This document shows, piece after piece, positions 1-63,449 of a stretch of 64,000 nt of DNA. Numbering within the stretch: position 1 is the stretch's first letter; each line of letters starts with the position of its first letter. The notes beneath the pieces were generated by a model. That model saw only the letters and a program-made list of their open reading frames with translations, was not told the origin of the DNA and did not search any database. The position numbers were made by a program, and so were the translations under genes. This DNA comes from Octopus sinensis (taxonomy: Eukaryota), in assembly GCF_006345805.1 (NCBI RefSeq), contig NC_043014.1:13702001-13766000 (forward strand), given 5' to 3'.

Positions 1-800
1 CAATGCTTTGTGTGTACTAGGAATAGGTAGTTCTAGTAAGGGTTTTACTTGGTCAGGGTCAGGTTTCAGCCAAGCAATCGAATCTGTGTAGTGCTGTAAA
101 TGCATTTGGTATCATTAAAAATTAAATTACAGTCCTTAGCAACTTGAAGAAAATGCTTTAAATTTCGATCATGTTCTTTCTTCGATTTACCACACACAGT
201 TATGTTGTCGATATATGCAAAAGTAGCTCTACAATTATGGCTTTCGATTATATTATCGATCACTACATTTGTAAGTCCGAAAGCAATACGTTTGCTTTGA
301 TATAATTTTCCCTGCGCTTCGAAAGCCATGTAAGGTCGATCTTTCAACTGGAACCTCAACTTGATGATGAGCACTTTTGAGATCTAGTGTGCTAAAATAA
401 TTAAACTGAGCTATGTTTGCGACCATGTCATGCATATTTGGCAGTGGATATCCATCTAATTGCGTAAACTATGGGTTTACAGTCAGAGCTTAAATTTTCA
501 AACAACCTCGGTGTAATGTCACTTAGAGCTCCCAAATGTAACGGGGGCTTATCGCCGTCGAAGGTAATTTGTACATGTTGATTTTCTGTTTTGATGGGGA
601 TTTATCCAATTTTTTTTTCACCTCACACTCCAGACCGATTTTGGGGGCACTTAAAAACCACGTGAGAAGCCTTTTCAGTAAAAAAATAAATTTGTAAATA
701 CTTTCAAACGAAAAGTTGTGTGATTTAAGGGAGATTTGGCTATTGTTTCTAGCACATCCCACGACCACCTTCCTCGTTTCTTTGTCACCCTCACATGTAT
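1..800 (-). mobile_element. Ty3/Gypsy LTR retrotransposon pol relic (reverse transcriptase), frameshifted, runs off the left edge
   Basis: Minus-strand frames give DGYPLPNMHDMV..YFSTLDLKSAHHQV, YIDNITVCGKSKKEHDRNL and PDPDQVKPLLELPIP, which are Gypsy RT motifs split over several frames. Confidence 0.9.
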
Positions 801-1234
801 TGATGTTTTTTCAATATTTTTCTCCCATGAACACATTTGTGATATTATAAAAAAAGATTTTTAATTTATGATTTTTTCAATCCTCACCATTTTATAATTT
901 CAAAATACTGGATAATCTGAGACGGTCATTGATCCAGCAATTTAAATAAGAGATATGTAAAAGATAATTTATTTTAACTAAGAAATATTGAAAAACATCA
1001 ATATATGTGAGATTAACAAAGAAACGATCAAGGTGGTTACAGGATGTGCTAGAAACAAGAGTCAAATAAATCTCCCTTAAATCACACCGTTTCGTCTGAA
1101 AATAATCGTTTTTTTGGGGGCTTTTTTTTTTACTCAAAGATTTCTCACATGGTTTTTAGGGGTGTAGTACCAAAACAATTGGCCAAAATCGGTCCGAAGG
1201 GCTAAGTGAAAAAAGGGCACTGTCATGCTTTTAG

Positions 1235-1800
1235 CTGTCAAGCCTTCCTTTCTCAATAGAAACAGACACATCAGAGGTAGCTATATCTGGCATTTTACAC
1301 CAAAACGGGAAGCCAATTGCATTTTTTTTATTCAAGAACCCTCAACCCATATGAGCGTCGTTATTCTTGTATTGAAAAAGAGGCGACAGCGATTGTGGAA
1401 TCTGAGAAAATGGTATCATTTTCTTCTTGGACGTAACTTCACACTAATAACTGATCAAAACAGTGTGGCTTTTGTTTAATTTTCAGAAGCGCAGTAAATC
1501 TAAAAACGGAAAGATAATGCGTTGGCGAATCGAACTAGCCCAGTATAAATTTGATATCATTTACCGCCAAGGCAAGTTTAATGTTGTATCTGATGCTTTA
1601 TTGTGCAGCTACGACTGATAATGAACTGTATCGTATTCATGCAGCGCTGTGTCATCCTGGGATCACACGACCTTACTCTGTAGATGATGTAAAGCGTATA
1701 ACTAACGATTGTGTAATATGTTGTGAGGTAACCTCTGTTTCGTCAGTAATTAAATCTACTCAAGCTTTTGAAAGATTCAGTGACCATTTTTTCCTAAGTT
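1235..1800 (+). mobile_element. Ty3/Gypsy pol relic (RNase H and integrase HHCC zinc finger), opposite orientation to the RT part
   Basis: Broken frames read FSIETDTSEVAISGILHQNGKPIAFF, WYHFLLGRNFTLITDQNSVAF, RWRIELAQYKFDIIYRQGKFNVVSDAL and IHAALCHPGITR..NDCVIC. Confidence 0.88.
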
Positions 1801-2159
1801 TTGTAGTGGTCCTATGTAGTTGAATGATCTCCCTTGCAAGAAAGTGTATAGAGTAACCCCCCTTTACTAAGTTTCTTGAGACATGAGTCATGAGATGTGA
1901 TTCTTAATTATTCAAGAAGCTTCGCGTTTCTCTTGGATGTTTCCAGAATGTCTAGCGTACCAGTTATAAAAACAGCTTGCTAACCCTGCTCTACGCCACA
2001 TGACTGAAAGCCATCACTTAGTTGCTATTTCTATATTTCCTATCTCTGAACTTTCTTGCATAGATTACTTCATTCAACTAGATTCTGCTGCCACAACTAC
2101 ATCAAGAACGATAACATTCAAGAGTCTTTTAATGTCTTGTCATTTGTAGTAACAACGAT

Positions 2160-2575: not shown

Positions 2576-2691
2576 TAATAATGTGTCTATCCCACTGAAA
2601 GTATTGTCTTCAAGGATGAAGAGCACTATAAGGTAATAATGTGTCTATCCCACTGAAAGTATTGTCTTCAAGGATGAAGAGCACTATAAGG
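2576..2691 (+). repeat. Perfect 58-bp tandem duplication
   Basis: TAATAATGTGTCTATCCCACTGAAAGTATTGTCTTCAAGGATGAAGAGCACTATAAGG occurs at 2576-2633 and 2634-2691. Confidence 0.95.
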
Positions 2692-2898
2692 AATCAGTGC
2701 TAAGTAGCATATTACTGGAAACTGAAATATTTGATTTATACAAATGATTAAATGTTAATTTTCAAATTTTGTAACTCATTTTTAAAATGTTTCTCACTTT
2801 TTTTCTTTTGTAGCTGCTTGAATCTGCAGCCATCTCAAAATACAAAAAATATCTGAATTTATTTACATATATTTATAACAGCAAACAGAAAAACAACC

Positions 2899-3690
2899 AT
2901 GTCATCTGCCAGTATTCAAAGAACCGAAAAAGTATATACAGACAGTGTACCTGTTGACCACAGTCTAGATGATATTAGTTTAAATGGACATGATATACCT
3001 TACTCACCAGAGCATTTAGTATATAATATGGAATATCCTACAAAAGGTTATGCTCTAGTCATTAACAATGAAGTATTGTCATTTGGTAATGCTCGCGAAA
3101 TCTCGAGAGAAGAGGTACATTCTATGTCGGATACACTTAAGATGTATGGATTTAAAGTTATCACTCGGAACAACTTGAAGGCTTGTGACTTCAGACAGAT
3201 ATTTAACGACGTCAGCAAACTGGACCATTCAAAATGTGCTTCTTTTGCTTGTATTATTCTAACCCAAGGATTACAGTCTAGTACTATTCAATGCTCTGAT
3301 GAAACTATCTCACTAACAGAGTTATTACCAATGTTTTCCCCCAACAAATGCCCAACTCTCGTTGGTAAACCTAAATTATTTTTCATTCAAAATGCAGACA
3401 CATTAGCAAATAGTGCACACAATTCACAACTTTATAGTGATTACAAAGTTCCAATGATTTCTTTATATGAAGATATCCTTATTTCCTCTTGTACTGTAAG
3501 CTCTGAGAGGAGAGTTGGAGGCTTTATTGAGATATTAAGTAACAGCCTGAAGAACTTTAGAAAGGTGGAACTGCTTTCTATTTTAATGGGAGTCAATTAC
3601 GCCATTGTTTCTAAGTCCAAGAACAATGGTTCAAGAACTAATGCCCCTTCTATACTTTCAACTTTAACAAAACAAATGACATTCTCATAA
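2899..3690 (+). CDS. Caspase-3/7-like (peptidase C14) protein, 263 aa, catalytic dyad substituted (predicted pseudo-caspase)
   Basis: Caspase motifs YNMEYPTKGYALVINN, FACIILTQG (canonical SHG), CPTLVGKPKLFFIQNADT (canonical QACRG) and STLTKQMTF. Uninterrupted ORF. Pyrimidine tract plus TAG acceptor at 2811-2813, alternative CAG acceptor at 2879-2881, ACAACCATG start context. Confidence 0.88.
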   Translation: MSSASIQRTEKVYTDSVPVDHSLDDISLNGHDIPYSPEHLVYNMEYPTKGYALVINNEVLSFGNAREISREEVHSMSDTLKMYGFKVITRNNLKACDFRQIFNDVSKLDHSKCASFACIILTQGLQSSTIQCSDETISLTELLPMFSPNKCPTLVGKPKLFFIQNADTLANSAHNSQLYSDYKVPMISLYEDILISSCTVSSERRVGGFIEILSNSLKNFRKVELLSILMGVNYAIVSKSKNNGSRTNAPSILSTLTKQMTFS

Positions 3691-3819
3691 CCTCATTGGT
3701 GTCCCTCATTTTCAATCTTCTGTGGTAATGGGGGAATGGGGACTCCAAAAGAGATCTCAGGGAGTAGAATCTCTGCATTCCTGAGTTAGTTTTCCACTAC
3801 AATTCTGCAAACAAAGAGA

Positions 3820-4290
3820 CTTGGAGAAGCCATTATGAAAGACTGCCAAATGTTGACCCAGTAGAGGGACCAGCTATCCCAATAGACAGCTCCTTAGTAG
3901 ATAAAGCAATTAAGGATATGAAGACAGGGAAAGAACCTGGCCCATCAGGAATCGCTGCTGGGATGATTAAAGTATCTGGTGGTGTGGGCTATGGCCTAGT
4001 CACCCGCATTGTAAACCAGGTAGTTCATGATGGAGCCATACCCAATGACTGGCATAGCAGCACCATAGTCATCTGCTACAAGGGTAAAGGTGATGCTCTA
4101 GATAGAAATAACTACAAGGGTATTAAACTGCTGGATCAGGTGATGAAGGTCACAGTGAGGGTCATAGTCCATCTCATTAGGGAGAGTCTGCTTAGATGAG
4201 ATGCAGTTTGGTTTTATGCCAGGCAGAAGCACCACCGTACTTGGCTTTTGTTGAGTTGGAGAAAGCCTTTGACAGAGGAATTCGATGATG
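3820..4290 (+). mobile_element. RTE-clade LINE RT fragment, decayed
   Basis: MKTGKEPGPSG..IPNDWHSSTIVICYKGKGDALDRNNYKGIKLL; homologous to the RTE copy at 25085-28020. Confidence 0.9.
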
Positions 4291-10126: not shown

Positions 10127-10203
10127 ATACCATTCTACCACTTGTGTTACTCTTATCACCCTGAATGGTGCAAATCATAAATAATTGTACTTAAATATCT
10201 TAC

Positions 10204-10599
10204 CTTGCTTCTCCAAGACGTGTTCAAGACCCTCCTTGAATTTTACTTTTGACATTCTGTATGCTAAATTGATGGGTTCTTCTGAATTTTCAATTATAAA
10301 AAATTCTGGTTGACTATAATTTTGTTGTAAGCTTATCATTGATTGTTCATTTTTTAAATTTTCTATCATTACATCATCTGGTTCGGATACACTGCTTGTT
10401 GCATCATCCTCAGTACTAGCTAATTGCGTGATTGCATCTGTTAGTTGCATATTTGTTTGTTTTCTTTGAATGTCAGCTTCAGATTTGCTTGAATACCGAT
10501 TTAATGACTTTAAAGTGGATTGATGGGTAATAATTCCAAATCCTCTATTTTTTGAGGATTTTTTCTTTTGCATTATTTTATTTTTCTGCTCCATTTTAT
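10204..10599 (-). CDS. Internal coding exon of an unidentified gene (396 nt, phase 1/1)
   Basis: Minus-strand acceptor TTTTTTATTTTGTTTTCACAG (AG at 10601-10600) and donor CAAG|GTAAGA (GT at 10203-10202). Open for 132 codons in 70%+ AT sequence: KMEQKNK..LTDAITQLASTEDD..LAYRMSKVKFKEGLEHVLEKQ. No recognised domain. Confidence 0.6.
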
Positions 10600-11018: not shown

Positions 11019-12206
11019 TGTTTCTCTTTTGAAAATATCTCTCCAGGCATTTGAAACATTAAATATTGGGTTCAAATTTTGGTAGAAGGCCAACAATCAC
11101 AGGGTAGGAATAAGTTAGTTACATCAACCCCTGTGCTCAACTGATACTTATTTTATCGACACCAAAAGGACGAAAGGCGGAGCTGACCACAACAGAGTTT
11201 CAACTCAGAACATAAAGACTGACAGAATTGCACTAGGTACTTTGCCCAGCATGTTAATGATTCTGCCAGCTCACCACCTTTGAAACAACAAATATTAATT
11301 TTAGTTGGAATGACTTAGTAAAACCAATAAGTTACAGACTTATGGACACATTGAAACTCCGATGTCTGGCAGCTGACTTGGCAGACACCCATAAAATTAT
11401 CAACCATCGTTCAAACAATAACTCTGAGCACCTTTTCAAACTCCACCCATCTAACACCCGTGGACATATTTACAAAGTAAGAAAACAGCACAGCTCCCAT
11501 GACTTCAGGAAATATTTTTTTCACGCTGAGAGTTGCTGAAGCATGGAACAAACTGCCGGCATCAGTTGTTAGTTGTCGGAGCACTGCATCCTTCAAAACT
11601 TCCATGCTTTCTGAGATTCGCCAACACTACACCTGATTTTCTCCCCTCCATATACACACAAGCATGTATCTAACTCATGCATTGTTCGCTTTCCAGACAT
11701 TTGTACATTACTGCATATACTCTGACAAGTTGTGGTGTACCTGAGCACTGTATACAATAATTTCATTATTATTATTATAGATATACTTTATCCAGGAATC
11801 TGAGAGGATTATAACTCAGTACAATACAGTCATTAATTTTATAATACTGCTCCTTCTTACAGTGGTAAATTGCACAGTACCATAATTTCAGCTAAGGTTG
11901 ATACAGTAAAATGCCAAAGATGGGATTTAAATTGTAATCCAATACACTGTTTAGTAGACCAACTGTAGATCCTTAGTCTAAGTCAATCAAAACTTAATAT
12001 GAATAGCAAGTAGTTTGGTGATTCACAATTCAGAGTTCAACCTTTATTTTAGTTCACTTAGCTCTTGTGCTTGCTTTTATTCTTGTGTATGTATAATGTA
12101 TGTGTGTATATATATATATATATATAAATTAGAGAAAAACCACTATTATGCAATTCAAACAATGATAGACATAAATAAAAAATAAAATATATTTTTTAAA
12201 AACAAG

Positions 12207-13932
12207 GTCATAACCAATCTCATTAGGGAGAGAATTTGTTTAGATGAAATGCAGTTCGGTTTTGTACCAGGTAGAAGCACCACTGATGCTATATTCCTGG
12301 TCCGACAACTGCAGGAGAAGTACCTAGCTAAAGATAAACCCCTCTACATAGCTTTTGTAGACTTGGAGAAAGCCTTTGACAGGGTTCCCCGTTCCCTTAT
12401 CTGGTGGTCGATGCGGAAACTGGAGATTGAAGAATGGCTAAAAAGGGCTGTACAGGCTCTATATAGAGAGGCTGTCAGCAAGGTTAGGATTGGCAACGAA
12501 TATAGTGAAGAATTCCGGGTAGAAGTAGGTGTGCACCAGGGCTCAGCCCTCAGTCCCCTTTTATTCATCATAGTCCTTCAGGCAATAACAGAGGAATTCA
12601 AAACGGGATGCCCCTGGGAGCTCCTCTATGCTGATGACCTAGCTCTCATAGCAGAATCACTACCGGAACTAGAAGAGAAATTTCGGGTGTGGAAGCAAGG
12701 GTTGGAATCAAAGGGCCTTAGAATAAATGTAGCAAAGACCAAAGTATTAGTAAGCAGCAAGAGGTACTCAGCACACACCCCCTCGGGTAGGTGGCCCTGC
12801 TCAACCTGTAGGAAACTCCATAAGATGCACCCAATGTAAGTTATGGACACATAAGAGGTGCAGCAACATTAAAGGGGAATTAACAGATAAGATAGCTTTC
12901 ATGTGTAGCAGATGCACAGGGACAATAGACACAACAGACACTCAGAAAACAGATTCCATCACACTCCAGGGAGAGAAACTAGAAGTAGTTGATAGTTTCC
13001 GCTACCTGGGTGACCAAGTTAGTAGCGGAGGTGGATGCACAGAGAGTATCACCACTAGAATACGAATAGCCTGGGCAAAGTTCAGAAAGCTCCTACCCCT
13101 ACTGGCAACAAAAGGTCTCTCCCTCAGAGCAAAAGGTAGATTGTATGATGCATGTGTGCGAACTGCCATGCTTCACGGTAATGAAACATGGGCTGTGACT
13201 GCAGAAAACATGCGTAGACTTGAAAGAAATGAAGCTAGCATGATCCGCTGGATGTGTAGTGTCAGTGTGCACGCAAGACAGAGTGTAAGCATCCTGAGAG
13301 AAATGCTGGATATAAGAAGCATCAGATGTGGTGTGCAAGAGCGACGCTTGCGATGGTATGGTCATGTGCTGCGGATGGATGAAGAGAGATGTGTGAAGAA
13401 GTGCCACTCCCAAACAGTTGAAGGTATCAGGGGGAGAGGTAGACCCAGGAAGACATGAGATGAGGTAGTCAAGCATGACCTCAGAGCATTGGGCCTCACT
13501 GAGGCAATGGCGAAGGACCGAGATCTCTGGAGATATGCTGTGACTACAAAGACCCGGGCTGCTTTCTGCAGCAATTCCACATACCCCCTACCCATTCTAA
13601 GTACCCCGGATCCCCAAAGTACCCTGGATCCCCAAAGTACCCCGATCCCCAAAGTACCCCGGACCTCGTTGCACCCGTGCCGCTGACACGTTAAAAGCTC
13701 GAACCGATCGTGACCGATGCCGACCCTCCGGCCCCTGTGCAGGTGGCACGTAAAAAGCACCCAATCCACTCACGGAGTGGTTGGCGTTAGGAAGGGCATC
13801 CAGCCGTAGAAACTCTGCCAGATTCAGACTGGAGCCTGGAGCGGCCCCTGGCTTCCCAGACCCGGTCGAACCGTCCAACCCGTGCTAGCGCGGAAAGCGG
13901 ACGTTAAACGATGATGATGATGATGATGATGA
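12207..13932 (+). mobile_element. 5'-truncated RTE-clade LINE (RT C-half, 3' UTR, (GAT)n tail)
   Basis: QFGFVPGRSTTDAIF..FVDLEKAFDRVP..GVHQGSALSPLLF..LLYADDL..FRYLG..LRWYGHVLR. One frameshift near 12815, premature TGA at 13456-13458, (GAT)n tail at about 13910-13932. Confidence 0.95.
13599..13663 (+). repeat. 18-bp tandem repeat x3.7 in the RTE 3' UTR
   Basis: AAGTACCC(C/T)GGATCCCCA units. Confidence 0.85.
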
Positions 13933-25087: not shown

Positions 25088-28020
25088 CATCATCATCGTT
25101 TAACGTCCGTTTTCCGCGCTAGCATAGGCTGGACGGTTCGACCGGGGTCTGGGAAGCCAGGGGCTGCACCAGGCTCCAGTCTGATCTGGCAGTGTTTCTA
25201 CAGCTGGATGCCCTTCCTAACGCCAACCACTCCGCGAGTGTAGTGGGTGCTTTTTACGTGTCACCGGCACAGGTGCCAGGGGAGTCTGGAATCGGCCATG
25301 ATCGGTTGGTGCTTTTAACGTACCACCGGCACAGAAGCCAGCCAAGGCGGTGCTGGCATCGGTCACGTTTGGATGGTGCTTTTTATGTGCCACCGGCACA
25401 GAAGCCAGTCGAGGCGTCACTGGCATCGGCCACGTTTGGATGGTGCTTTTTATATGCCACCGGCACAGGTATCACAACTACTATTTCCATTGATATTTAT
25501 TTTGATGTTCATGTACTTGACTCAATAGGTCTCCTCAAGCACAGCGGGATGTTCTGGAATCCAAGGTACTTTGAATGGGCAAGGGCTATGTGGAACTGGT
25601 GCAGGAAGCAGCCCGGGTCTTTGCAGTCACAGCATATCTCCAGAGATCTCGGTCCTTCGCCATTGCCTCTGTGAGGCCCAATGCTCTGAGGTCATGCTTG
25701 ACTACCTCATCCCATGTCTTCCTGGGTCTACCTCTCCCCCTGATACCTTCAACTGTTTGGGAGCGGCACTTCTTCACACATCTCTCCTCATCCATCCGCA
25801 GTACATGACCATACCACCGCAAGCGTCGCTCTTGCACACCACATCTGATGCTTCTTATGTCCAGCATTTCTCTCAGGGTGCTTACCCTCTGTCGTGCGCG
25901 CACACTGACATTACACATCCAGCGGATCATGCTAGCTTCGTTTCTTTCAAGTCTACGCATGTCCTCTGCAATCACGGCCCATGTTTCTCTACCGTGAAGC
26001 ATGGCAGTTCATACACATGCGTCATAGAATCTACCTTTCACTCTGAGCGAGAGACCCTTTGTCGCCAGTAGGGGTAGGAGCTTTCTAAACTTTGCCCAGG
26101 CTATTCGTATTCTAGTGATGACACTCTCCCAGGTAGCGGAAACTATCAACTACTTCTAGTTTCTCCCCCTGGAGTGTGATGGAATCTGTTTTCTGAGTAT
26201 CTGTGGTGTCTATTGTCCCTGTGCATCTGACGCACATGAAAGCTATCTTCTCAGTTAATTTCCCTTTGATGTTGCTGCACCTCTTATGCATCCATAGCTT
26301 ACACTGGGTACATCTTATGGAGTTTCTACCTACACCTTTCCTACAGATCGAGCAGGGCCATCTATGAGAGCCTGGTCATCAGCATAGAGGAGCTCCCAGG
26401 GGCAATCTGTTTTGAATTCCTCTGTTATTGCCTGGAGGACTATGATGAATAAAAGGGGACTGAGGGCTGAGCCTTGGTGTACACCTACTTCTACCTGGAA
26501 TTCTTCACTATATTCGTTGTCAATCCTAACATTGCTGACAGGCTCTCTGTATAGGGCCTGTACAACCCTTATTAGCCATTCATCAATCTCCAGTTTCCGC
26601 ATCGACCACCAGATAAGGGATCAGGGGACCCTGTCAAAGGCTTTCTCCAAGTCCACAAAAGCTATGTAGAGGGGTTTATCTTTAGCTAGGTACTTCTCCT
26701 GCAGTTGTCGGACCAGGAATATAGCATCAGTGGTGCTTCTACCCGGCACAAAACCGAACTGCATCTCATCTAAGCAAATTCTCTCCCTAATGAGATGGGT
26801 TATGACCCTCTCTGTGACCTTCATCACCTGATCCAACAGTTTAATACCCCTGTAGTTATTTCTATCTAGAGCATCACCCTTACCCTTGTAGCAGTTGACT
26901 ATGGTGCTGCTACGCCAGTCATTGGGTATGAATCCATTATGAACTACCTGGTTTACAATGCAGGTGACTAGGCCATAGCCCACATAACCAGCTGTTTTAA
27001 GCATCTCAGCAGTGATTCCTGATGGGCTGGGGGCTTTACCTGGTTTCATACCCTTAATTGCCTTAACTACAAGGGAGCCGTCTATTCGGATAGCTGGTCC
27101 CTCTCCTGGGTCAACATTTGGCAGGCTCTCCTCCTCCCATTCATTCTCCACATTCAGCAGTCTTTCATAATGGCTTCTCCAAGCCTCTTTCTTTTCACCA
27201 TCATTAAAAGCAAGTGCAGCATCATCCATGCGGACACATTTCTTTTCTGTAACATCACTATTTTCTCTCACACACTGTCTGGCAATCCGAAATACCTCAG
27301 TTCTTTGGTCCTCACGTCGCTGGACATTGGCAAACTTCTTCTTTTCTGCTACATCTTTGGCTATGTATACCTGCTGCCCAGCCTCCCTTTTGGCTACCTG
27401 GTACAGTTCCCTGCTACCCCCATCCCTCCAGGCTTTCCAGGCCTGTTTCTTTGCACTAATGGCTTTGTCTACTGCACTATTCCACCACCACGTAACTCTA
27501 AGTTTGGAAGGGACTTTGCCTCATCCACAGACTTGGTCTGTGGCACTCAGCAAGCGGTCCTGTAGGAATTTCCAGCTACCTTCTATGTCCGACGTCTCTA
27601 GCTCCCCCTCCCTCTCATCAAATTTCTTGATGAGGATGTCCCTAAATCTTTGACCATGTGAAGGGTTCTTTAGCTTCTAAATCCTTCTTTTCTGGATTGG
27701 TCTGTTTCTTGGAATCCTTCTGGCCTCAAGCCTAAAGTCACTAATGATTAGCCTATGCTGAGGAATACATTCTTCACCCGGGAGGGTCTTTGTATTTAAG
27801 AGCAACCCTGCATCCCGCTGTCTGGTGAGGATGAAGTCTATTTGCCTAGCGGAGTCTCCTGACTGATAGGTTATAAGGTGGCAGTCAGGCTTCCTGAAGT
27901 TAGTGTTGCAGATTAAAGGTTACATGCATCACAGAATTCCAGTAGTCTAGTTCCCTCATCATTTCTGATGCCAATACCATGGCCACCGTGTACCCCAGTG
28001 AAGATACCCGATTCCCGCCC
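25085..28020 (-). mobile_element. RTE-clade LINE (endonuclease C-half, RT, 3' UTR, tail), multiple lesions
   Basis: EN motifs RNDEGTRLLEFC, NTNFRKP..ITY and QIDFIL. RT blocks as in 12207-13932. (GAT)n tail at 25085-25100 on the minus strand. Confidence 0.95.
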
Positions 28021-59496: not shown

Positions 59497-59622
59497 TCAA
59501 GAGTTCCTAGTTTCTAAGCAGTCACCCAAAGTGAGTCTGTAGTTGGCTATGGCGGTGATGCCGTGATAATGTACAAATGCAGCCGCGACAACGAACACAT
59601 GGAAAATCTGGTGACTTTGAAA
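59497..59622 (-). CDS. AdipoR: Adiponectin receptor (PAQR family), last coding exon
   Basis: Acceptor TTTTTCTTTTATTTTCAG (AG at 59624-59623). Reads FQSHQIFHVFVVAAAFVHYHGITAIANYRLTLGDCLETRNS*, with the HQIFH zinc-ligand motif. Phase 0 matches the upstream exon. Not in the ORF track. Confidence 0.95.
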   Translation of the reverse strand, partial: FQSHQIFHVFVVAAAFVHYHGITAIANYRLTLGDCLETRNS

Positions 59623-59697
59623 CTGAAAATAAAAGAAAAACAAAATTAATGTCAAAGATTTTATTAACAAAACAAACTGTGGTATTTTTTCAAATGA

Positions 59698-60095
59698 CTC
59701 TTTTACTTGTTTCAGTCATTTGACTGCGGCTATGCTGGAGCACCGCCTTTTAGTCGAGCAAATCGACCCCGGGACTTATTCTTTGTAAGCCCAGTACTTA
59801 TTCTATCGGTCTCTTTTGCCGAACCGCTAAGTGACGGGGACGTAAACACACCAGCATCAGTTGTCAAGCAATGCTAGGGGGGACAAACACAGACACACAA
59901 ACACATACACATATATATATACATATATACGACAGGCTTCTTTCAGTTTTCATCTACCAAATCCACTCAAAAGGCATTGGTCGGCCTGGGGCTATAGCAG
60001 AAGACACTTGCCCAAGATGCCACGCAGTGGAACTGAATCCGGAACCATGTGGTTGGTTAGCAAGCTACTTACCACACAGCCACTCCTGCGCCTAT
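59698..60095 (-). mobile_element. SINE family A in the last AdipoR intron
   Basis: Full copy about 75 bp from the acceptor. Confidence 0.9.
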
Positions 60096-61323
60096 ATTGA
60101 TTTTTTTCATCCTTTTTTTTCTTGCAGCAGCATCAATACAATAAGTGATGGCAATTTCTTTATGACTGAAGACCATAAGAGCAGCATGCCTTCAAGTGGC
60201 TCTGTAAACCAATCCTCGATGTTGCAGGGCTTTTCTTCCTGCCTGCACTTTTAAAGTGAAACTCAGTCCACTCAATCTAGTCTCAACTTTAGACTTGGAG
60301 GTCTGACCACAGTGGAGCAGTGGGCTAAGATGGCTGTGGTGACCAGAAAGTTGTTAGTTTTATATTGGAGTGACCATCACCTAGCTGAATTGCCTTACAA
60401 AGATAGAGAGCTCCACCTACCATAGAGTTGTCAGAAAAGTGTCAAAGAGGACACTGGGCCACTTGAGATTCCCCACTCCTTGATCAGCCATCAAGGCTGA
60501 CTCCCTTAGCCTTTTCTTTTCCCTAGGCACTCACAAAGCAGTGCAGGTGATTAACTCATACCTGGGACCCTGATAAGATGTACTACTCCAGGTCAGAGCA
60601 GAGCCGGAAACAGTAGTGGCTAAGAGATGGTGCTAAACGCCTCAAAATCTTGGAACTCCTGAATCAGGACCGCAATAGCTAATACAGCTTAGAGTCATAC
60701 TTAGGTCATACAATAAGTAACAACCAAGTAGACCAATCTAAGTACGTGACAGGTGCCTATTTTTTTGAAAACTAAAAAGAAAAGATGAAAGATAAATCAG
60801 TCAGGGTGGGATTCGTCATTCATCCTTCAAGAGTTGAACTGATTAATTAAGAAAGAACTACAACTTAATTACTGAACTAAAAGCAAACGTTGGATGTTGC
60901 CATCTGCCCACAATTTGTGGTCTTGTGCCTATGTTAAAAACTGTGTTATTTTGTATATTGGGAGGGTCATTATGCCAATAATAAACACATGAATTCCCAT
61001 CAAGAATCTTGCAAACCAAATACAAAGAAAAAAAAAAACAATTATTGTAGTTTTGTTTAATCCCAGGTGAATTCTCATCAAGTAGACTTATCAAAGATAT
61101 TTCAGTTGCAAACACTTGGTCTTTTTTCAATAAATAGCATATGTAGAATTACATTAGATAATCTGTCCTTCTCTAAAGATGATAGGGTGTGATCTTGCAA
61201 GATATTTAGCTGCTATTTCTAGCAGGCCGAGGAACTACATATTATCAAATGGTCTTCTGCCTGTGTTATAAATTACTATTTTTAAAGAAAGGTGGATTAG
61301 CAGAATTGGTAAAACTAGCTTAA

Positions 61324-61523
61324 CCCTTTAGTATTCAGATGTCTTTGTCAAATGTATTGCTTATTTATTCACAACGGTTTTAATTAATCAGATGTTATTT
61401 TATAGCTTCAAGATATCAATGGCCTTTTTTGTATATTTTTGGAATGACATTGTAGGGTAAGTTTGAGAGGTTGGATCTGGTAGAATATTTGGGTCTGCTA
61501 TGTCCAGATTAAATGCTAAAGAG
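61324..61523. mobile_element. piggyBac-like MITE in the AdipoR intron
   Basis: TTAA|CCCTTTAG ... CTAAAGAG|TTAA (TTAA at 61320-61323 and 61524-61527). Confidence 0.7.
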
Positions 61524-61572
61524 TTAAAAAGAAATTAGAAATAGCATTTGAGAATATCTCCTGGCTACTTAC

Positions 61573-61766
61573 CCAAATATCGAATTTTCCTGGAAACAGT
61601 CTTTCTGGAATACGAACTGCATAGATGATAGCTCCGGATATGTAGAGAAGTGCCATAAGGGCTAGCCAGCCGAGAGATGCACAATTAATGGCATGATAGA
61701 ACCCATCAGTGATAACATAATGCATGGCAGGGATAATACCACTTAAACCCAAACCTATAAAAACAC
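61573..61766 (-). CDS. AdipoR: Adiponectin receptor, penultimate coding exon (194 nt)
   Basis: Acceptor CCCTTTTTTTTCTTACCAG and donor TGG|GTAAGT. Reads (G)VFIGLGLSGIIPAMHYVITDGFYHAINCASLGWLALMALLYISGAIIYAVRIPERLFPGKFDIW. Earlier exons were not found, so they presumably lie right of the window. Confidence 0.95.
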
Positions 61767-63449
61767 CTGGTAAGAAAAAAAAGGGAGAGAAAGGAGTGAG
61801 AAAAATAAACAAACAATACTAAAAGAAAAACTTTAAATACTTCAGTAAGTCTTTAGATTTACAAACAAAAAAATGTAGAGGTTACAATATGGAGAGCATA
61901 AGGAAGTATTTCAAGGGAGACAAAGAGACGTTATAATGGAGATGAGACAAAGGCACAAGGGAGATAATGTGAACAAATTCAATGCATGTGGTGGAAATCC
62001 CGATATTTCTAATGAATTTAAGAACTCAACTGGATCTATAGAAATGCATGTTCCTAATCTAATTTCTATTTTGTTAAGTCATTGCCTATTAATAGCATCA
62101 ACATCCCCATTTTTAGCAGCTAAAATTATTCTTTCTGATATCCATTTCGTATATATAATATATAATGAAATTATTGTATACAGTGCTCAGGTGCACCACA
62201 ACTTGTCAGAAAGTGCGTATAAAGTGTATGCAGTAATGTACAAATGTCTGGAAAGCGAACAATGTATGAGTCAGATACATGCTTGCGTGTGTATGGAGGG
62301 GAGAAAATCAGGTGTAGTGTTGGCGAATCTCAGAAAGCATGGAAGTTTTGAAGGGTGCAGTGCTCCGACAACTAACAACTGATGACGGCAGTTTGTTCCA
62401 TGCTTCAGCAACTCTTAGCATGGAAAAATGTTTCCGAAAGTCATGGGCGCTGTGCTGTTTTCTGACTTTGTAAATATGCACATGGGTGTTAGACAGGTGG
62501 AGTTTGAAAAGTTGCTCAGAGTTATTGTTTGTAAGATGGTTGATAATTTTATGGGTGTCTGCAATGTCCTCAAAAATAAATGTTTCCAAATCAATTTCAT
62601 TTTCAACTCTATTTCCACTGGAAATAAATAATATCATGTGATTGCCATCACTTAGGATCCTATTTTCTCCTACTTCTAACAGTGAATTTGCATAGGAGTG
62701 TCATCACTAAAGCAAGGTCTATTGAATATTATTCAATTCTCAGAAAATATATATTGGCTTCAAATTTTAGCACAAGGCCAATAATTTCGAGGGATGGGTC
62801 AAGTTGATTACCTTGACCCCCAAGTGCTCAACTGGTACTTATGTTATTGACCTCGAAAGGATAAAAAAGCAAAGTCGACCCTGGTGAGATTTGAATTTAG
62901 AACATAAAGACAGACAAAATGCCTAGTCCAGTGTAATAACGATTTTGCCAGCTTGCCACCTTTCTCAAAAAAAATAAATAATAATATAACCGTTTTGTAT
63001 GTGTGTGTGAGAGAGAGAACTTTGCATCTCAACCATGTGGTCTTGAGTTCACTCCCACTGCATGGCATCTTTGGCAAGTATCTTTTACTACAGCCCCAGG
63101 CCAACCAAAGCCTTGTGAATGGATTTGGTAGATGGAAATTGAAAGCCTACTATATATATATATATATAGATTAATCAGCCGAAATTGCGAGGATGATCCG
63201 GTTCGTGACTGAAGATTAGAGGCTTCAAATGACCTGTCCGTTTTTTGTATCGTCTATTTGAATGTTTTGCATTCTTGTTCCATTTTGTATTTTTATATAT
63301 ATTTTTTATACATATATATATATTTGCATATGTTTGTGTGCACCATTCTCTTGATATCATGTGATAATTGTAAACACAGATGGACTTCCTGTGATATTGT
63401 GTGTGTGTCTCAATATAGTCCCGTCCTGTGCAGTACTGTGTCACACAGG

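What the first reader, a model, noticed from the sequence alone, without database searches (positions are those of the whole stretch)
2899..3690. Intact effector-type caspase ORF with both catalytic residues replaced: candidate cephalopod caspase decoy
Seen in sequence: the His of the SHG motif is Gln123 (CAA, 3265-3267) and QACRG reads QNADT (Ala166, 3394-3396). The 263-codon frame is nonetheless stop-free and keeps caspase structural motifs, probable substrate-pocket residues (Arg66, Gln164, Arg in SERR) and Asp-rich N-terminal sites (VYTD/S, VPVD/H, SLDD). Established: caspases need the His-Cys dyad, and dead paralogues such as c-FLIP, C. elegans CSP-2/CSP-3 and Aedes CASPS18 act as regulators. 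Inference: this is a maintained pseudo-enzyme that heterodimerises with or sequesters active caspases or IAPs. An intronless CDS suggests retroposition. Alternatively, the 2881 acceptor keeps the frame open (phase 1), so a CARD/DED prodomain could be spliced on from upstream.
Basis: partly seen in the sequence, partly recalled or inferred. Interest (0 to 1): 0.72.

Follow-up and report, generated by a model that had tools for sequence, protein, structure and literature searches.

The report
Conserved dead caspase gene of octopods
This octopus gene encodes a caspase-like protein that lost its catalytic residues and substrate groove before octopuses and argonauts diverged, yet selection has kept it intact, so it is probably a non-enzymatic regulator (a "pseudocaspase") that nobody has described.

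Summary
Window 2899-3690(+) is an intact 263-codon ORF with a full caspase domain (Pfam PF00656, 93.8 bits). The confident AF2 model matches caspase-7/-3. SHG reads TQG (Gln123) and QACRG reads QNADT (Ala166).

The window is Octopus sinensis. Orthologues in O. vulgaris, O. bimaculoides, an unidentified octopodid and Argonauta hians (two copies) all lack the dyad (His to Q/R/R/V/V; Cys to A/A/A/A/T). One Argonauta copy lies beside the same PAQR/HlyIII gene as in the window, so the loss predates the Octopus-Argonauta split.

It is not a decaying pseudogene. omega=0.59 (LRT vs 1, p=0.004). Only 0.8% of neutral simulations keep the ORF open in three lineages. The CDS has one in-frame indel, against about 6-19 expected from non-coding rates.

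- The substrate groove is dismantled: Arg64 and Trp214 equivalents are lost and loops L1-L4 are shortened.
- The single coding exon is shared with active octopod caspase-3-like paralogues, so it does not mark a gene-specific retrocopy.
- A spliced-on CARD/DED exon is excluded.

Expression and the decoy mechanism remain untested. Verdict: a new member of the known pseudocaspase kind, of moderate interest.

The parts
2899..3690 (+). Complete single-exon CDS (263 aa plus TAA) of a catalytically dead effector-type caspase paralogue
   Evidence: ORF; Pfam PF00656 at 93.8 bits; caspase-3/-7 are the best PDB sequence and fold matches; AF2 pLDDT 82.7 and pTM 0.80
2790..2813 (+). Polypyrimidine tract plus AG (tttctcactttttttcttttgtAG), a probable 3' splice site of a 5'-UTR intron; the exon would start at 2814
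   Evidence: TTTTTTTCTTTTGTAG|CTG is identical in O. sinensis, O. vulgaris and the unidentified octopodid, and O. bimaculoides differs only by a one-T-shorter tract, although the surrounding DNA has indels. Active paralogues and Argonauta L008 also have a polyY-CAG acceptor just upstream of the ATG. Inferred, with no RNA evidence
2814..2898 (+). Probable 5' UTR part of the coding exon (non-coding)
   Evidence: Contains indels that are not multiples of 3 between species and in-frame stops (15, 8 and 2 codons upstream of the ATG in three species). The CAACC|ATG start context is shared with active paralogues
2932..2955 (+). N-terminal motif V12-Y-T-D15|S16-V-P-V19, a conserved Asp-containing candidate cleavage site whose product would start with SVPV
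   Evidence: [VI][YF]TDSVP[VI] is conserved in all four Octopus-lineage sequences and present three times in Argonauta P0009. Active paralogues have GIFFNER.P there instead. Cleavage and IAP binding are inference only
3265..3267 (+). Codon 123, CAA (Gln), at the catalytic His position (SHG reads TQG)
   Evidence: The same column is Q/R/R/V/V in the dead clade and H in 10 of 10 active octopod paralogues
3394..3396 (+). Codon 166, GCA (Ala), at the catalytic Cys position (QACRG reads QNADT)
   Evidence: The same column is A/A/A/A/T in the dead clade and C in 10 of 10 active paralogues
3499..3522 (+). Residues 201-208 (SSERRVGG), the remnant of loop L3, six residues shorter than in active caspases; the Trp214 equivalent is Gly
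   Evidence: L3 length is 7 against 13 in all active sequences, and W214 becomes G/G/G/L/V. R204 and R205 are invariant within the clade. The model has low pLDDT here
3643..3684 (+). Residues 249-262 (APSILSTLTKQMTF), the C-terminal beta-6 strand that forms the dimer interface in caspases
   Evidence: P250, S254, T255, L256, T257, K258 and F262 are invariant across Octopus and Argonauta. The segment aligns to IPCIVSMLTKE.YF of caspase-3/-7 and is predicted as a strand with high pLDDT
3727..4283 (+). LINE-type retroelement fragment about 37 nt after the stop codon (context only, not part of the gene product)
   Evidence: No colinear match to O. bimaculoides, which carries a shorter fragment of the same repeat family at the same place. 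Other copies lie at window 26730-27130(-) and 12206-12382
59500..59631 (-). Exon of a neighbouring PAQR/HlyIII-family gene, used as a synteny anchor
   Evidence: 97.7% aa identity over 44 aa to the HlyIII gene next to Argonauta P0009 (L008 18093-18245); Pfam HlyIII
61555..61767 (-). Preceding exon of the same PAQR/HlyIII gene, a second synteny anchor
   Evidence: 95.8% aa identity over 71 aa to L008; Pfam PF03006 at 65.4 bits

Best explanation
Window 2899-3690 is a genuine gene of Octopus sinensis with a single coding exon. It encodes a pseudocaspase: a short-prodomain, caspase-3/7-like protein that has lost protease function. The loss of the His-Cys dyad, and of most of the substrate groove, happened once, before the Octopus-Argonauta split. 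Since then the reading frame has been preserved by weak but significant purifying selection, at a locus that has stayed next to a PAQR/HlyIII gene. These points are shown. What follows is inferred. The protein keeps the caspase alpha/beta core and the beta-6 dimerisation strand, but it can neither cleave nor canonically bind an Asp substrate. It therefore most likely acts through protein-protein contacts, as a non-catalytic partner of the rapidly evolving active octopod caspase-3-like paralogues or of their regulators, tuning their activation. This would resemble FLIP(L), CSP-3 or CASPS18. The conserved N-terminal TD|SVP motif suggests that it is itself cut by an active caspase. My confidence that it is a maintained, catalytically dead caspase gene is about 0.8. 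My confidence in the specific dimerisation/regulator mechanism is about 0.35.
For: Fold and family: Pfam PF00656 at 93.8 bits; caspase-3/-7 are the top PDB sequence hits; AF2 pLDDT 82.7 and pTM 0.80; Foldseek top hits are caspase-7/-3 at E about 1e-18 with TM up to 0.88. Dead state: His to Q/R/R/V/V, Cys to A/A/A/A/T, Arg64 to R/C/G/A/E, Trp214 to G/G/G/L/V; loops are shortened (L1 by 3, L2 by 6-8, L3 by 6, L4 by about 4-6), whereas 10 of 10 active octopod paralogues keep all of these. Age: the dead clade is monophyletic at 100% bootstrap and includes two Argonauta hians genes. Argonauta L008 and the window share a convergent downstream PAQR gene, with exons 96-98% identical in protein. Octopus sinensis and O. 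bimaculoides are colinear over about 12 kb. Maintenance: the four-taxon ML codon model gives omega=0.59, with an LRT against omega=1 of 8.29 (p=0.004). NG86 gives omega 0.50-0.57 with upper 95% bounds of 0.80-0.90. Only 0.8% of neutral simulations keep the ORF open in all three lineages. The CDS has a single 6-bp in-frame indel, while about 330 nt of upstream flank has 5-8 indel events; this implies about 12-19 expected in the CDS, or about 6.5 using the intronic rate of 51 gap openings in 6.15 kb. All six genes are intact ORFs. The dead lineage's omega (0.54-0.62) is no higher than that of an active paralogue pair (0.69). Interaction surface: the beta-6 motif PS..STLTK..F is invariant across the clade.
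Against: No expression or protein evidence could be obtained. The only non-NCBI contigs (Logan L002-L004) are genomic. omega of about 0.6 is high and is similar in core and loop partitions. For the closest informative pair, CDS divergence (JC 0.094) is not lower than upstream-flank divergence (0.082). O. sinensis and O. vulgaris differ by 3 non-synonymous and 0 synonymous changes. The Argonauta paralogue pair only reaches p=0.058. Nothing here tests dimerisation, and the model is of a monomer. Placement relative to the active effector caspases is unresolved in the NJ tree because of the long branch.
Confidence: 0.6

Rival explanations
1. Caspase-activated IAP binder. The protein is chiefly a substrate rather than a dimer partner. 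An active caspase cuts after Asp15 in the conserved [VI][YF]TD|SVP[VI] motif and exposes an N-terminal Ser-Val-Pro-Val that resembles IAP-binding motifs (AVPI of Smac, AVPF of Hid; Ser-initiated motifs such as SGVD of the caspase-3 small subunit are recalled from memory). The dead caspase body then titrates IAP BIR domains, either releasing or buffering active caspases.
For: The motif is conserved in all four Octopus-lineage sequences and is triplicated in the syntenic Argonauta orthologue P0009. It is a derived feature, absent from active paralogues, which have GIFFNER.P there. The N-terminal 35 residues are predicted to be disordered and therefore accessible.
Against: This is pattern-based only. 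The Argonauta paralogue P0008 lacks the motif. Canonical IBMs start with Ala. P3 is aromatic, which is unusual for caspase sites. No binding or cleavage data exist.
Confidence: 0.12
2. Neofunctionalised scaffold unrelated to cell-death control. The caspase fold has been recruited for a new binding or structural role, marked by invariant residues specific to this clade.
For: The substrate groove is entirely dismantled rather than minimally inactivated. New clade-invariant motifs replace family-conserved ones: TIQC.D.T instead of QIYGTD.K, SSCT instead of AYST, and the invariant Cys132 and Cys198. The clade evolves faster than active paralogues over the same species split (42-45% vs 63-70% identity).
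Against: No evidence for any partner or tissue. The beta-6 dimer strand, the most caspase-specific interaction surface, remains conserved. Every known pseudocaspase acts within caspase pathways (PMC7586951, PMC3591282, PMC4840389).
Confidence: 0.15
3. Slowly decaying, unexpressed relic. This would be a pseudogene whose ORF has survived by chance in a slowly evolving genome.
For: omega is about 0.6. CDS and flank divergence are similar for O. sinensis versus O. bimaculoides (0.094 vs 0.082). There are 3 non-synonymous and 0 synonymous differences to O. vulgaris. The neighbourhood is rich in transposable elements, with a LINE fragment 37 nt after the stop. No transcript evidence was found.
Against: Six intact ORFs occur in five species, spanning a split at which proteins are only 42-45% identical. 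The LRT rejects omega=1 (p=0.004). The probability that all three lineages stay open under neutrality is 0.008. There is a strong deficit of indels, and the only one is in frame. For the more distant pairs the CDS evolves at about two thirds of the flank rate (0.19 vs 0.28). A splice acceptor and the start-codon context are conserved.
Confidence: 0.08
4. Still an active protease that uses non-canonical catalytic residues.
For: Gln164 and an Arg-Arg pair in the L3 remnant are invariant, as are several cysteines (C118, C132, C151, C198).
Against: The residues at the His position differ between species (Q, R, V) and the Cys position is Ala or Thr, so no conserved substitute nucleophile or base sits at the active site. 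Arg64 and Trp214 are lost and all groove loops are shortened.
Confidence: 0.02

Closest known systems
FLIP(L) (CFLAR), the vertebrate pseudo-caspase
   Same: It has a caspase-like domain with both dyad residues replaced (His to Arg, Cys to Tyr in human; PMC7586951). O. bimaculoides and the unidentified species also have Arg at the His position. It is evolutionarily maintained and acts by heterodimerising with an active paralogue through the (pseudo)catalytic domain.
   Different: FLIP(L) is an initiator-type paralogue with tandem DEDs and is recruited to the DISC. The octopod protein has only a 41-residue N-terminal peptide and no CARD or DED, resembles caspase-3/-7, and arose independently. 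Heterodimerisation is not shown here.
C. elegans CSP-3 (and CSP-2)
   Same: These are caspase paralogues without a functional active site that have been reported to inhibit the active caspase CED-3 (PMC3591282). They are small proteins without long prodomains.
   Different: [quoted passage not shown] The octopod protein keeps both p20- and p10-like parts in one chain. The anti-apoptotic role of CSP-3 was itself not reproduced in PMC3591282.
Aedes aegypti CASPS18 decoy caspase
   Same: It is an effector-type (Decay-like) caspase paralogue that lacks catalytic capacity and is considered a decoy that enhances its active paralogue CASPS19 (PMC4840389). It arose within a lineage-specific expansion of effector caspases, as this gene probably did.
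   Different: It is an independent origin in insects. It is paired with a closely related active partner, whereas the octopod gene has no close active paralogue (nearest 29-34% identity) and is not adjacent to one in this 64-kb window.
Molluscan and cephalopod caspases with non-canonical active sites (Crassostrea gigas Cg3A with His to Tyr and QSCRG; Euprymna scolopes EsCasp2_1X 'QANSV'; Mya arenaria caspase-3-like P0004 with SYG and QACTD)
   Same: They show that lophotrochozoan caspase expansions include members with altered catalytic motifs (PMC7836458; PMC9389742).
   Different: Those are single-residue or single-motif departures listed in survey tables. None is shown to be an ancient, syntenic, dyad-less clade with a dismantled groove, and none is orthologous to this gene.
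Active octopod caspase-3-like family (e.g. O. sinensis P0188, O. bimaculoides P0184, A. hians P0190)
   Same: They share the single coding exon, the acceptor just upstream of a CAACC|ATG start, similar length, an N-terminal M..(D/S)..QR..G(I/V)(F/Y) peptide, and lineage-specific strings such as RKNLSV..QIFTDIS.MDH. Their omega is similarly high (0.69).
   Different: They retain [ST]HG, QACRG, GFYSWR, GSWF and full-length loops. They are 63-70% identical between Argonauta and Octopus, against 42-45% for the dead clade.

Membership tests
Caspase family (MEROPS C14A / Pfam Peptidase_C14), homology and fold | Significant full-length match to the caspase domain profile | tested here: met
   PF00656 at 93.8 bits against a cut-off of 21.4, covering profile positions 1-232 of 233
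Caspase family (MEROPS C14A / Pfam Peptidase_C14), homology and fold | Caspase alpha/beta fold with p20-like and p10-like parts | tested here: met
   AF2 pLDDT 82.7 and pTM 0.80; Foldseek top 50 are all caspases, almost all caspase-7/-3, at E about 1e-18 with TM (target) up to 0.88
Catalytically competent caspase | His-Cys catalytic dyad (SHG ... QACXG) | tested here: not met
   Gln123 and Ala166. Across the clade the His position is Q/R/R/V/V and the Cys position is A/A/A/A/T
Catalytically competent caspase | P1-Asp pocket (Arg64, Gln161, Arg207 in caspase-3 numbering) and S2/S4 residues (Trp206, Trp214) on full-length loops L1-L4 | tested here: not met
   Only Gln161 is conserved. Arg64 becomes R/C/G/A/E and Trp214 becomes G/G/G/L/V. 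L1, L2, L3 and L4 are all shortened. Whether R204 corresponds to Arg207 is ambiguous: HMMER pairs them, whereas MAFFT places a gap
Effector (short-prodomain) caspase | No CARD or DED; short N-terminal peptide; closest to caspase-3/-6/-7 | tested here: met
   Only one Pfam domain. A 41-residue N-peptide precedes the domain. An upstream coding exon is excluded. The best PDB hits are caspase-3/-7. The tree position within the effector caspases is unresolved
Pseudoenzyme / pseudocaspase | Homologous to an enzyme family but lacking essential catalytic residues | tested here: met
Pseudoenzyme / pseudocaspase | Evolutionarily maintained (orthologues share the dead state; ORF under selection) | tested here: met
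   Six intact genes in five species; synteny with Argonauta; omega=0.59 with p=0.004; stop-gain and indel tests. The constraint is weak
Pseudoenzyme / pseudocaspase | Expressed as RNA and protein | not testable with these tools
   No transcript data are reachable. The Logan contigs are genomic. Two RefSeq accessions with an identical protein in O. bimaculoides hint at transcript variants, but this was not verified
Pseudoenzyme / pseudocaspase | Regulates an active paralogue by binding (heterodimer, decoy or sequestration) | not testable with these tools
   The only indirect evidence is an invariant beta-6 dimer-strand motif. No multimer modelling or assay was available
   Active paralogues also have single-exon CDSs. 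The gene has a conserved 5'-UTR splice acceptor. No poly(A) tract follows the stop; a LINE fragment does. A retrocopy signature was seen instead for the non-syntenic Argonauta copy L007

The most novel reading that the evidence does not exclude
Octopods may have evolved a pseudocaspase that works as a caspase-triggered IAP antagonist or buffer. Cleavage at the conserved TD|SVP site would unmask a Smac/Reaper-like N-terminus (SVPV) on a dead caspase body that can still dock onto caspase or IAP surfaces. That would combine two known regulatory principles, pseudocaspase and IAP-binding motif, in one ancient, octopod-specific protein. It would also supply a cell-death switch co-evolving with the expanded, fast-evolving octopod caspase-3-like family.
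Probability: 0.1. Interest if true: 0.8.

Novelty: new member of a known kind. Interest (0 to 1): 0.5.

Why it matters
Pseudocaspases are few: FLIP(L) is described as the only human one (PMC7586951), and effector-type examples are rarer still. This gene is annotated in databases only as "caspase-3" or "caspase-3-like", and I found no paper that recognises it as dead. Anyone counting or assaying octopus executioner caspases would therefore misclassify it. It offers a natural experiment: an effector-caspase scaffold that lost the whole substrate groove yet was kept since before the Octopus-Argonauta split. That shows which surfaces of the fold (beta-4, the beta-6 dimer strand, a new TIQC motif) can carry non-catalytic function. 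It also points to a lineage-specific layer of cell-death regulation in cephalopods, whose caspase-3-like family is expanded and evolves fast (omega about 0.7).

Tried and rejected
1. I first read the ~1.18-kb Logan contigs (L002-L004) as possible transcripts. I rejected this because they end in (AT)n and (GT)n repeats and are colinear with genomic DNA upstream of the ATG, including the intron-like polypyrimidine tract.

2. An upstream coding exon or CARD/DED is rejected.

3. A gene-specific retrocopy is rejected, because the active paralogues share the single-exon CDS.

4. A second caspase copy or a tandem partner in the 64-kb window was not found by tblastn.

5. I looked for stronger constraint in the structural core than in the loops. 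omega is about 0.35-0.65 in every partition, which is uninformative with three sequences.

6. The NJ tree does not resolve the sister group of the dead clade because of the long branch.

7. The species behind SRR11869385/91/94 could not be identified; no paper cites these runs.

8. The argonaut genome paper gives no divergence date for Argonauta versus Octopus. The age is therefore given only relative to that split.

9. Searching the literature for the orthologues' accession numbers gave no hits.

10. Model coordinates are not exposed, so I could not measure the positions of Cys132 and Cys198 relative to the old active site or the dimer interface.
Full report
**1. The observation**

Window 2899-3690 (+) is an ATG-to-TAA ORF of 263 codons. 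Its product matches Pfam Peptidase_C14 end to end: protein 49-260 on profile 1-232 of 233, 93.8 bits against a cut-off of 21.4, E=1.7e-26. Its best matches among solved structures are zebrafish and human caspase-3 and human caspase-7 (E about 1e-19 to 1e-17).

In those alignments 'LTQGLQ' lies under 'LSHGDE' and 'FFIQNAD' lies under 'FFIQACR'. An AlphaFold2 model built on a 60-sequence alignment is confident (mean pLDDT 82.7, pTM 0.80). Low confidence is confined to the N-terminal 35 residues and the former active-site loops. Foldseek returns only caspases, almost all caspase-7 or caspase-3, with TM up to 0.88 relative to the target.

**2. Source and relatives**

The exact protein is encoded on GCA_006345805.1 CM016876.1. 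That assembly also carries proteins named Octopus sinensis. The relatives found are:
- O. vulgaris has a 263-aa orthologue at 99% identity (CAI9737443.1).
- O. bimaculoides has a 265-aa orthologue at 83% identity (XP_014769622.1 and XP_014769623.1, named 'caspase-3').
- An unidentified octopodid, sequenced in SRR11869385/91/94, has a 265-aa orthologue at 71% identity.
- An exhaustive HMMER scan of 1.84 billion representatives added two Argonauta hians proteins named 'caspase-3-like': P0008 (255 aa, 48% identity) and P0009 (361 aa, 43% identity).

The next best hits are at about 30-33% identity. No member of this clade was found outside Octopoda.

**3. The dead state is ancestral and goes beyond the dyad**

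Across the five non-redundant members:

| Caspase-3 position | Dead clade | Active octopod paralogues |
|---|---|---|
| His121 | Q/R/R/V/V | H in 10 of 10 |
| Cys163 | A/A/A/A/T | C in 10 of 10 |
| Arg64 (P1 pocket) | R/C/G/A/E | R in 10 of 10 |
| Trp214 | G/G/G/L/V | W in 10 of 10 |
| Gln161 | kept in all | Q in 10 of 10 |

Every active-site loop is shorter than in the ten active octopod paralogues and the four outgroups:

| Loop | Dead clade (residues) | Typical active paralogue (residues) |
|---|---|---|
| L1 | 11 | 14 |
| L2/linker | 22-24 | 28-31 |
| L3 | 7 | 13 |
| L4 | 11-13 | 15-17 |

Arg66 is specific to O. sinensis and O. vulgaris. The RR of 'SERR' is invariant within the clade, but its equivalence to Arg207 depends on the aligner.

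The clade is monophyletic with 100% bootstrap support.

Orthology with Argonauta is positional. Two consecutive exons of a HlyIII/PAQR gene lie at window 61555-61767(-) and 59500-59631(-). They are 95.8% and 97.7% identical in protein to the gene that lies convergently downstream of P0009 in Argonauta locus L008. Between O. sinensis and O. bimaculoides the locus is colinear over about 12 kb. In the O. bimaculoides annotation the gene sits antisense inside a gene with an LRR_TMOD-LMOD domain. The dyad was therefore lost once, before the Octopus-Argonauta split.

**4. Live gene or relic?**

Evidence that the gene is maintained:
- A GY94-type ML model on ((O. sinensis, O. vulgaris), O. bimaculoides, sp. 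3) gives omega=0.59 and kappa=3.4. It rejects omega=1 (LRT 8.29, p=0.004).
- Nei-Gojobori pairwise omega is 0.50-0.57, with bootstrap upper bounds of 0.80-0.90.
- Pairwise ML gives 0.54-0.62.
- Neutral simulations with the observed numbers of substitutions keep the ORF open in all three lineages in only 0.8% of trials.
- The CDS has one indel, of 6 bp and in frame. The about 330 nt upstream has 5-8 indel events per species pair, and colinear non-coding blocks have 51 gap openings in 6.15 kb. By my arithmetic this means about 6.5 to 19 indels expected in 789-795 nt.
- All six genes, including both Argonauta copies at only 42-45% identity to Octopus, are uninterrupted.

Evidence on the other side:
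- omega is high and about the same in the core, the loops and the N-peptide.
- For O. sinensis versus O. bimaculoides, CDS divergence (JC 0.094) is not below upstream-flank divergence (0.082). For the more distant pairs it is (0.19 versus 0.28).
- O. sinensis and O. vulgaris differ by three non-synonymous changes and no synonymous ones.
- The Argonauta paralogue pair gives omega=0.64 with p=0.058.

An active paralogue pair (O. sinensis P0188 versus O. bimaculoides P0184, possibly not one-to-one orthologues) gives omega=0.69. A high omega is therefore a property of the whole octopod caspase-3-like family, not a sign of decay in this member.

I conclude that the reading frame is maintained by selection (about 0.8). 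Expression could not be tested. The Logan contigs that carry the third orthologue end in simple repeats and are colinear with genomic upstream sequence, so they are genomic.

**5. Gene structure**

The two active octopod caspase-3-like genes that I checked also have single-exon CDSs: 867 bp for 288 aa and 852 bp for 283 aa. Both Argonauta dead genes do too. Upstream of the ATG, a polypyrimidine tract plus AG (window 2790-2813) is conserved in all four Octopus-lineage sequences, although the neighbouring DNA has indels. Active paralogues and Argonauta L008 likewise have a polyY-CAG acceptor shortly before a shared CAACC|ATG start context.

The family pattern is therefore a 5'-UTR intron plus one coding exon. 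The lack of CDS introns says nothing specific about this gene.

Species 3 has an in-frame TAA two codons before the ATG. O. bimaculoides has a 1-nt indel between that AG and the ATG, which changes the phase. The first in-frame upstream stops lie 15, 8 and 2 codons before the ATG in the three lineages.

**6. What is conserved, and the likely mechanism**

Between Octopus and Argonauta, invariant residues are densest in:
- beta-4 (KPKLFFIQ; 67% invariant)
- the preceding NKC.TL segment (58%)
- helix 2 (50%)
- the C-terminal beta-6 strand (PS..STLTK..F; 50%)
- a hairpin with the clade-specific motif TIQC.D.T (47%), which replaces QIYGTD.K of the active paralogues

They are sparsest in L2, L4 and the N-peptide.

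In caspases, beta-6 forms the dimer interface (established knowledge; compare the Caspase-3 V266 mutant entries 5iar, 5i9b and 5iak among the matches, V266 being a dimer-interface residue by my recollection). A protein that keeps the fold and that strand but has no groove is best explained as a non-catalytic binding partner. The known pseudocaspases FLIP(L), CSP-3 and CASPS18 work in this way (PMC7586951, PMC3591282, PMC4840389). This step is inference, and I give it about 0.35.

A second lead is the derived N-terminal motif [VI][YF]TD|SVP[VI]. It is conserved in all Octopus-lineage sequences and present three times in the syntenic Argonauta orthologue. Cleavage after the Asp would expose SVPV, which resembles IAP-binding motifs. 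That resemblance is recalled from memory, so it is a lead and not a test. The linker Asp181 (LYSD/HDSD) is conserved within the Octopus lineage but is shifted in Argonauta.

**7. Comparison with what is known, and novelty**

The gene meets the homology and fold criteria of the caspase family and fails the catalytic ones. It has the short-prodomain architecture of effector caspases. It meets the sequence-level and evolutionary criteria of a pseudoenzyme. Expression and regulatory function remain untested.

Surveys of molluscan and cephalopod caspases list isolated non-canonical motifs: Cg3A with His to Tyr (PMC7836458), and EsCasp2_1X with 'QANSV' (PMC9389742). I found no description of this clade, and databases call it caspase-3(-like). 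It is a new member of a known kind (pseudocaspases), independently evolved and old. Interest is moderate at 0.5. On the other hand, the deep conservation strengthens the central claim.

Noticed in passing
window 2576-2691: A 58-bp tandem duplication (two copies, 2576-2633 and 2634-2691) lies about 200 bp upstream of the ATG, inside the presumed 5'-UTR intron. It is present in O. sinensis only; O. vulgaris, O. bimaculoides and the third species have one copy.
   Followed up: partly
L007 9940-10000 and 10769-10840 (Argonauta hians BAAFZT010000015.1): The non-syntenic Argonauta copy (P0008) looks like a processed retrocopy of the syntenic gene (P0009, L008). Homology between the two starts exactly at the L008 5'-UTR splice acceptor (..CCAG|CAGAACTTTT), and L007 has ATTAAA followed by an A9 tract about 60 nt after its stop. 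The ORF is nevertheless intact, with omega=0.64 against its parent.
   Followed up: partly
L008 10001-11086 (Argonauta P0009): The syntenic Argonauta orthologue carries a 35-residue insertion in the L3 remnant that contains a third copy of the N-terminal 'NG.PTIFTDS.P' motif and a duplicated 'TTRTNR' segment. It also has a tandem duplication of the motif at the N-terminus and a 40-residue basic C-terminal extension. It may be a partly mis-modelled or idiosyncratic copy.
   Followed up: no
window 3727-4283; also 26730-27130(-), 12206-12382: A LINE-type retroelement fragment (ORF 3918-4199 with an RT N-terminal-like sequence and no Pfam hit) lies 37 nt after the caspase stop codon. O. bimaculoides has a shorter fragment of the same repeat family at the same site, so the insertion is old and probably sits in or next to the 3' UTR.
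   Followed up: partly
window 66-435(-), 1225-1823(+), 12249-13458(+): Retroelement debris surrounds the gene: RVT_1 fragments at 66-371(-) (35.9 bits) and 12249-12836(+) (94.1 bits), and a weak RT_RNaseH hit at 1225-1476. Further RT-like copies at about 25.6-26.1 kb and 28.3-28.7 kb match Argonauta repeats.
   Followed up: partly
window 59500-61767(-): Two highly conserved exons of a PAQR/HlyIII (adiponectin-receptor-like) gene are 96-98% identical in protein to Argonauta. The gene presumably continues beyond these exons, and the rest of it was not mapped.
   Followed up: partly
window 10175-10594(-): A 139-aa ATG-initiated ORF lies in a block that is 88.6% identical in DNA to O. bimaculoides L001 17048-17571. 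That is where the annotated antisense host gene (product with PF27087 LRR_TMOD-LMOD) begins. It may be that gene's first coding exon, with no significant Pfam hit. If so, the caspase gene is nested in its intron.
   Followed up: partly
P0004 (Mya arenaria caspase-3-like, XP_052788819.1): This bivalve caspase-3-like protein has Tyr in place of the catalytic His (SYG) and QACTD in place of QACRG. It parallels Crassostrea Cg3A (PMC7836458) and is an independent, partial departure from the canonical site.
   Followed up: no
L009 / L010 (active octopod caspase-3-like genes P0188, P0184): The catalytically intact octopod caspase-3-like family is expanded (at least 10 distinct proteins across three Octopus species and Argonauta). 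The two members checked have a single coding exon, and that pair evolves fast (omega about 0.69 for an O. sinensis / O. bimaculoides pair), which is unusual for executioner caspases.
   Followed up: partly
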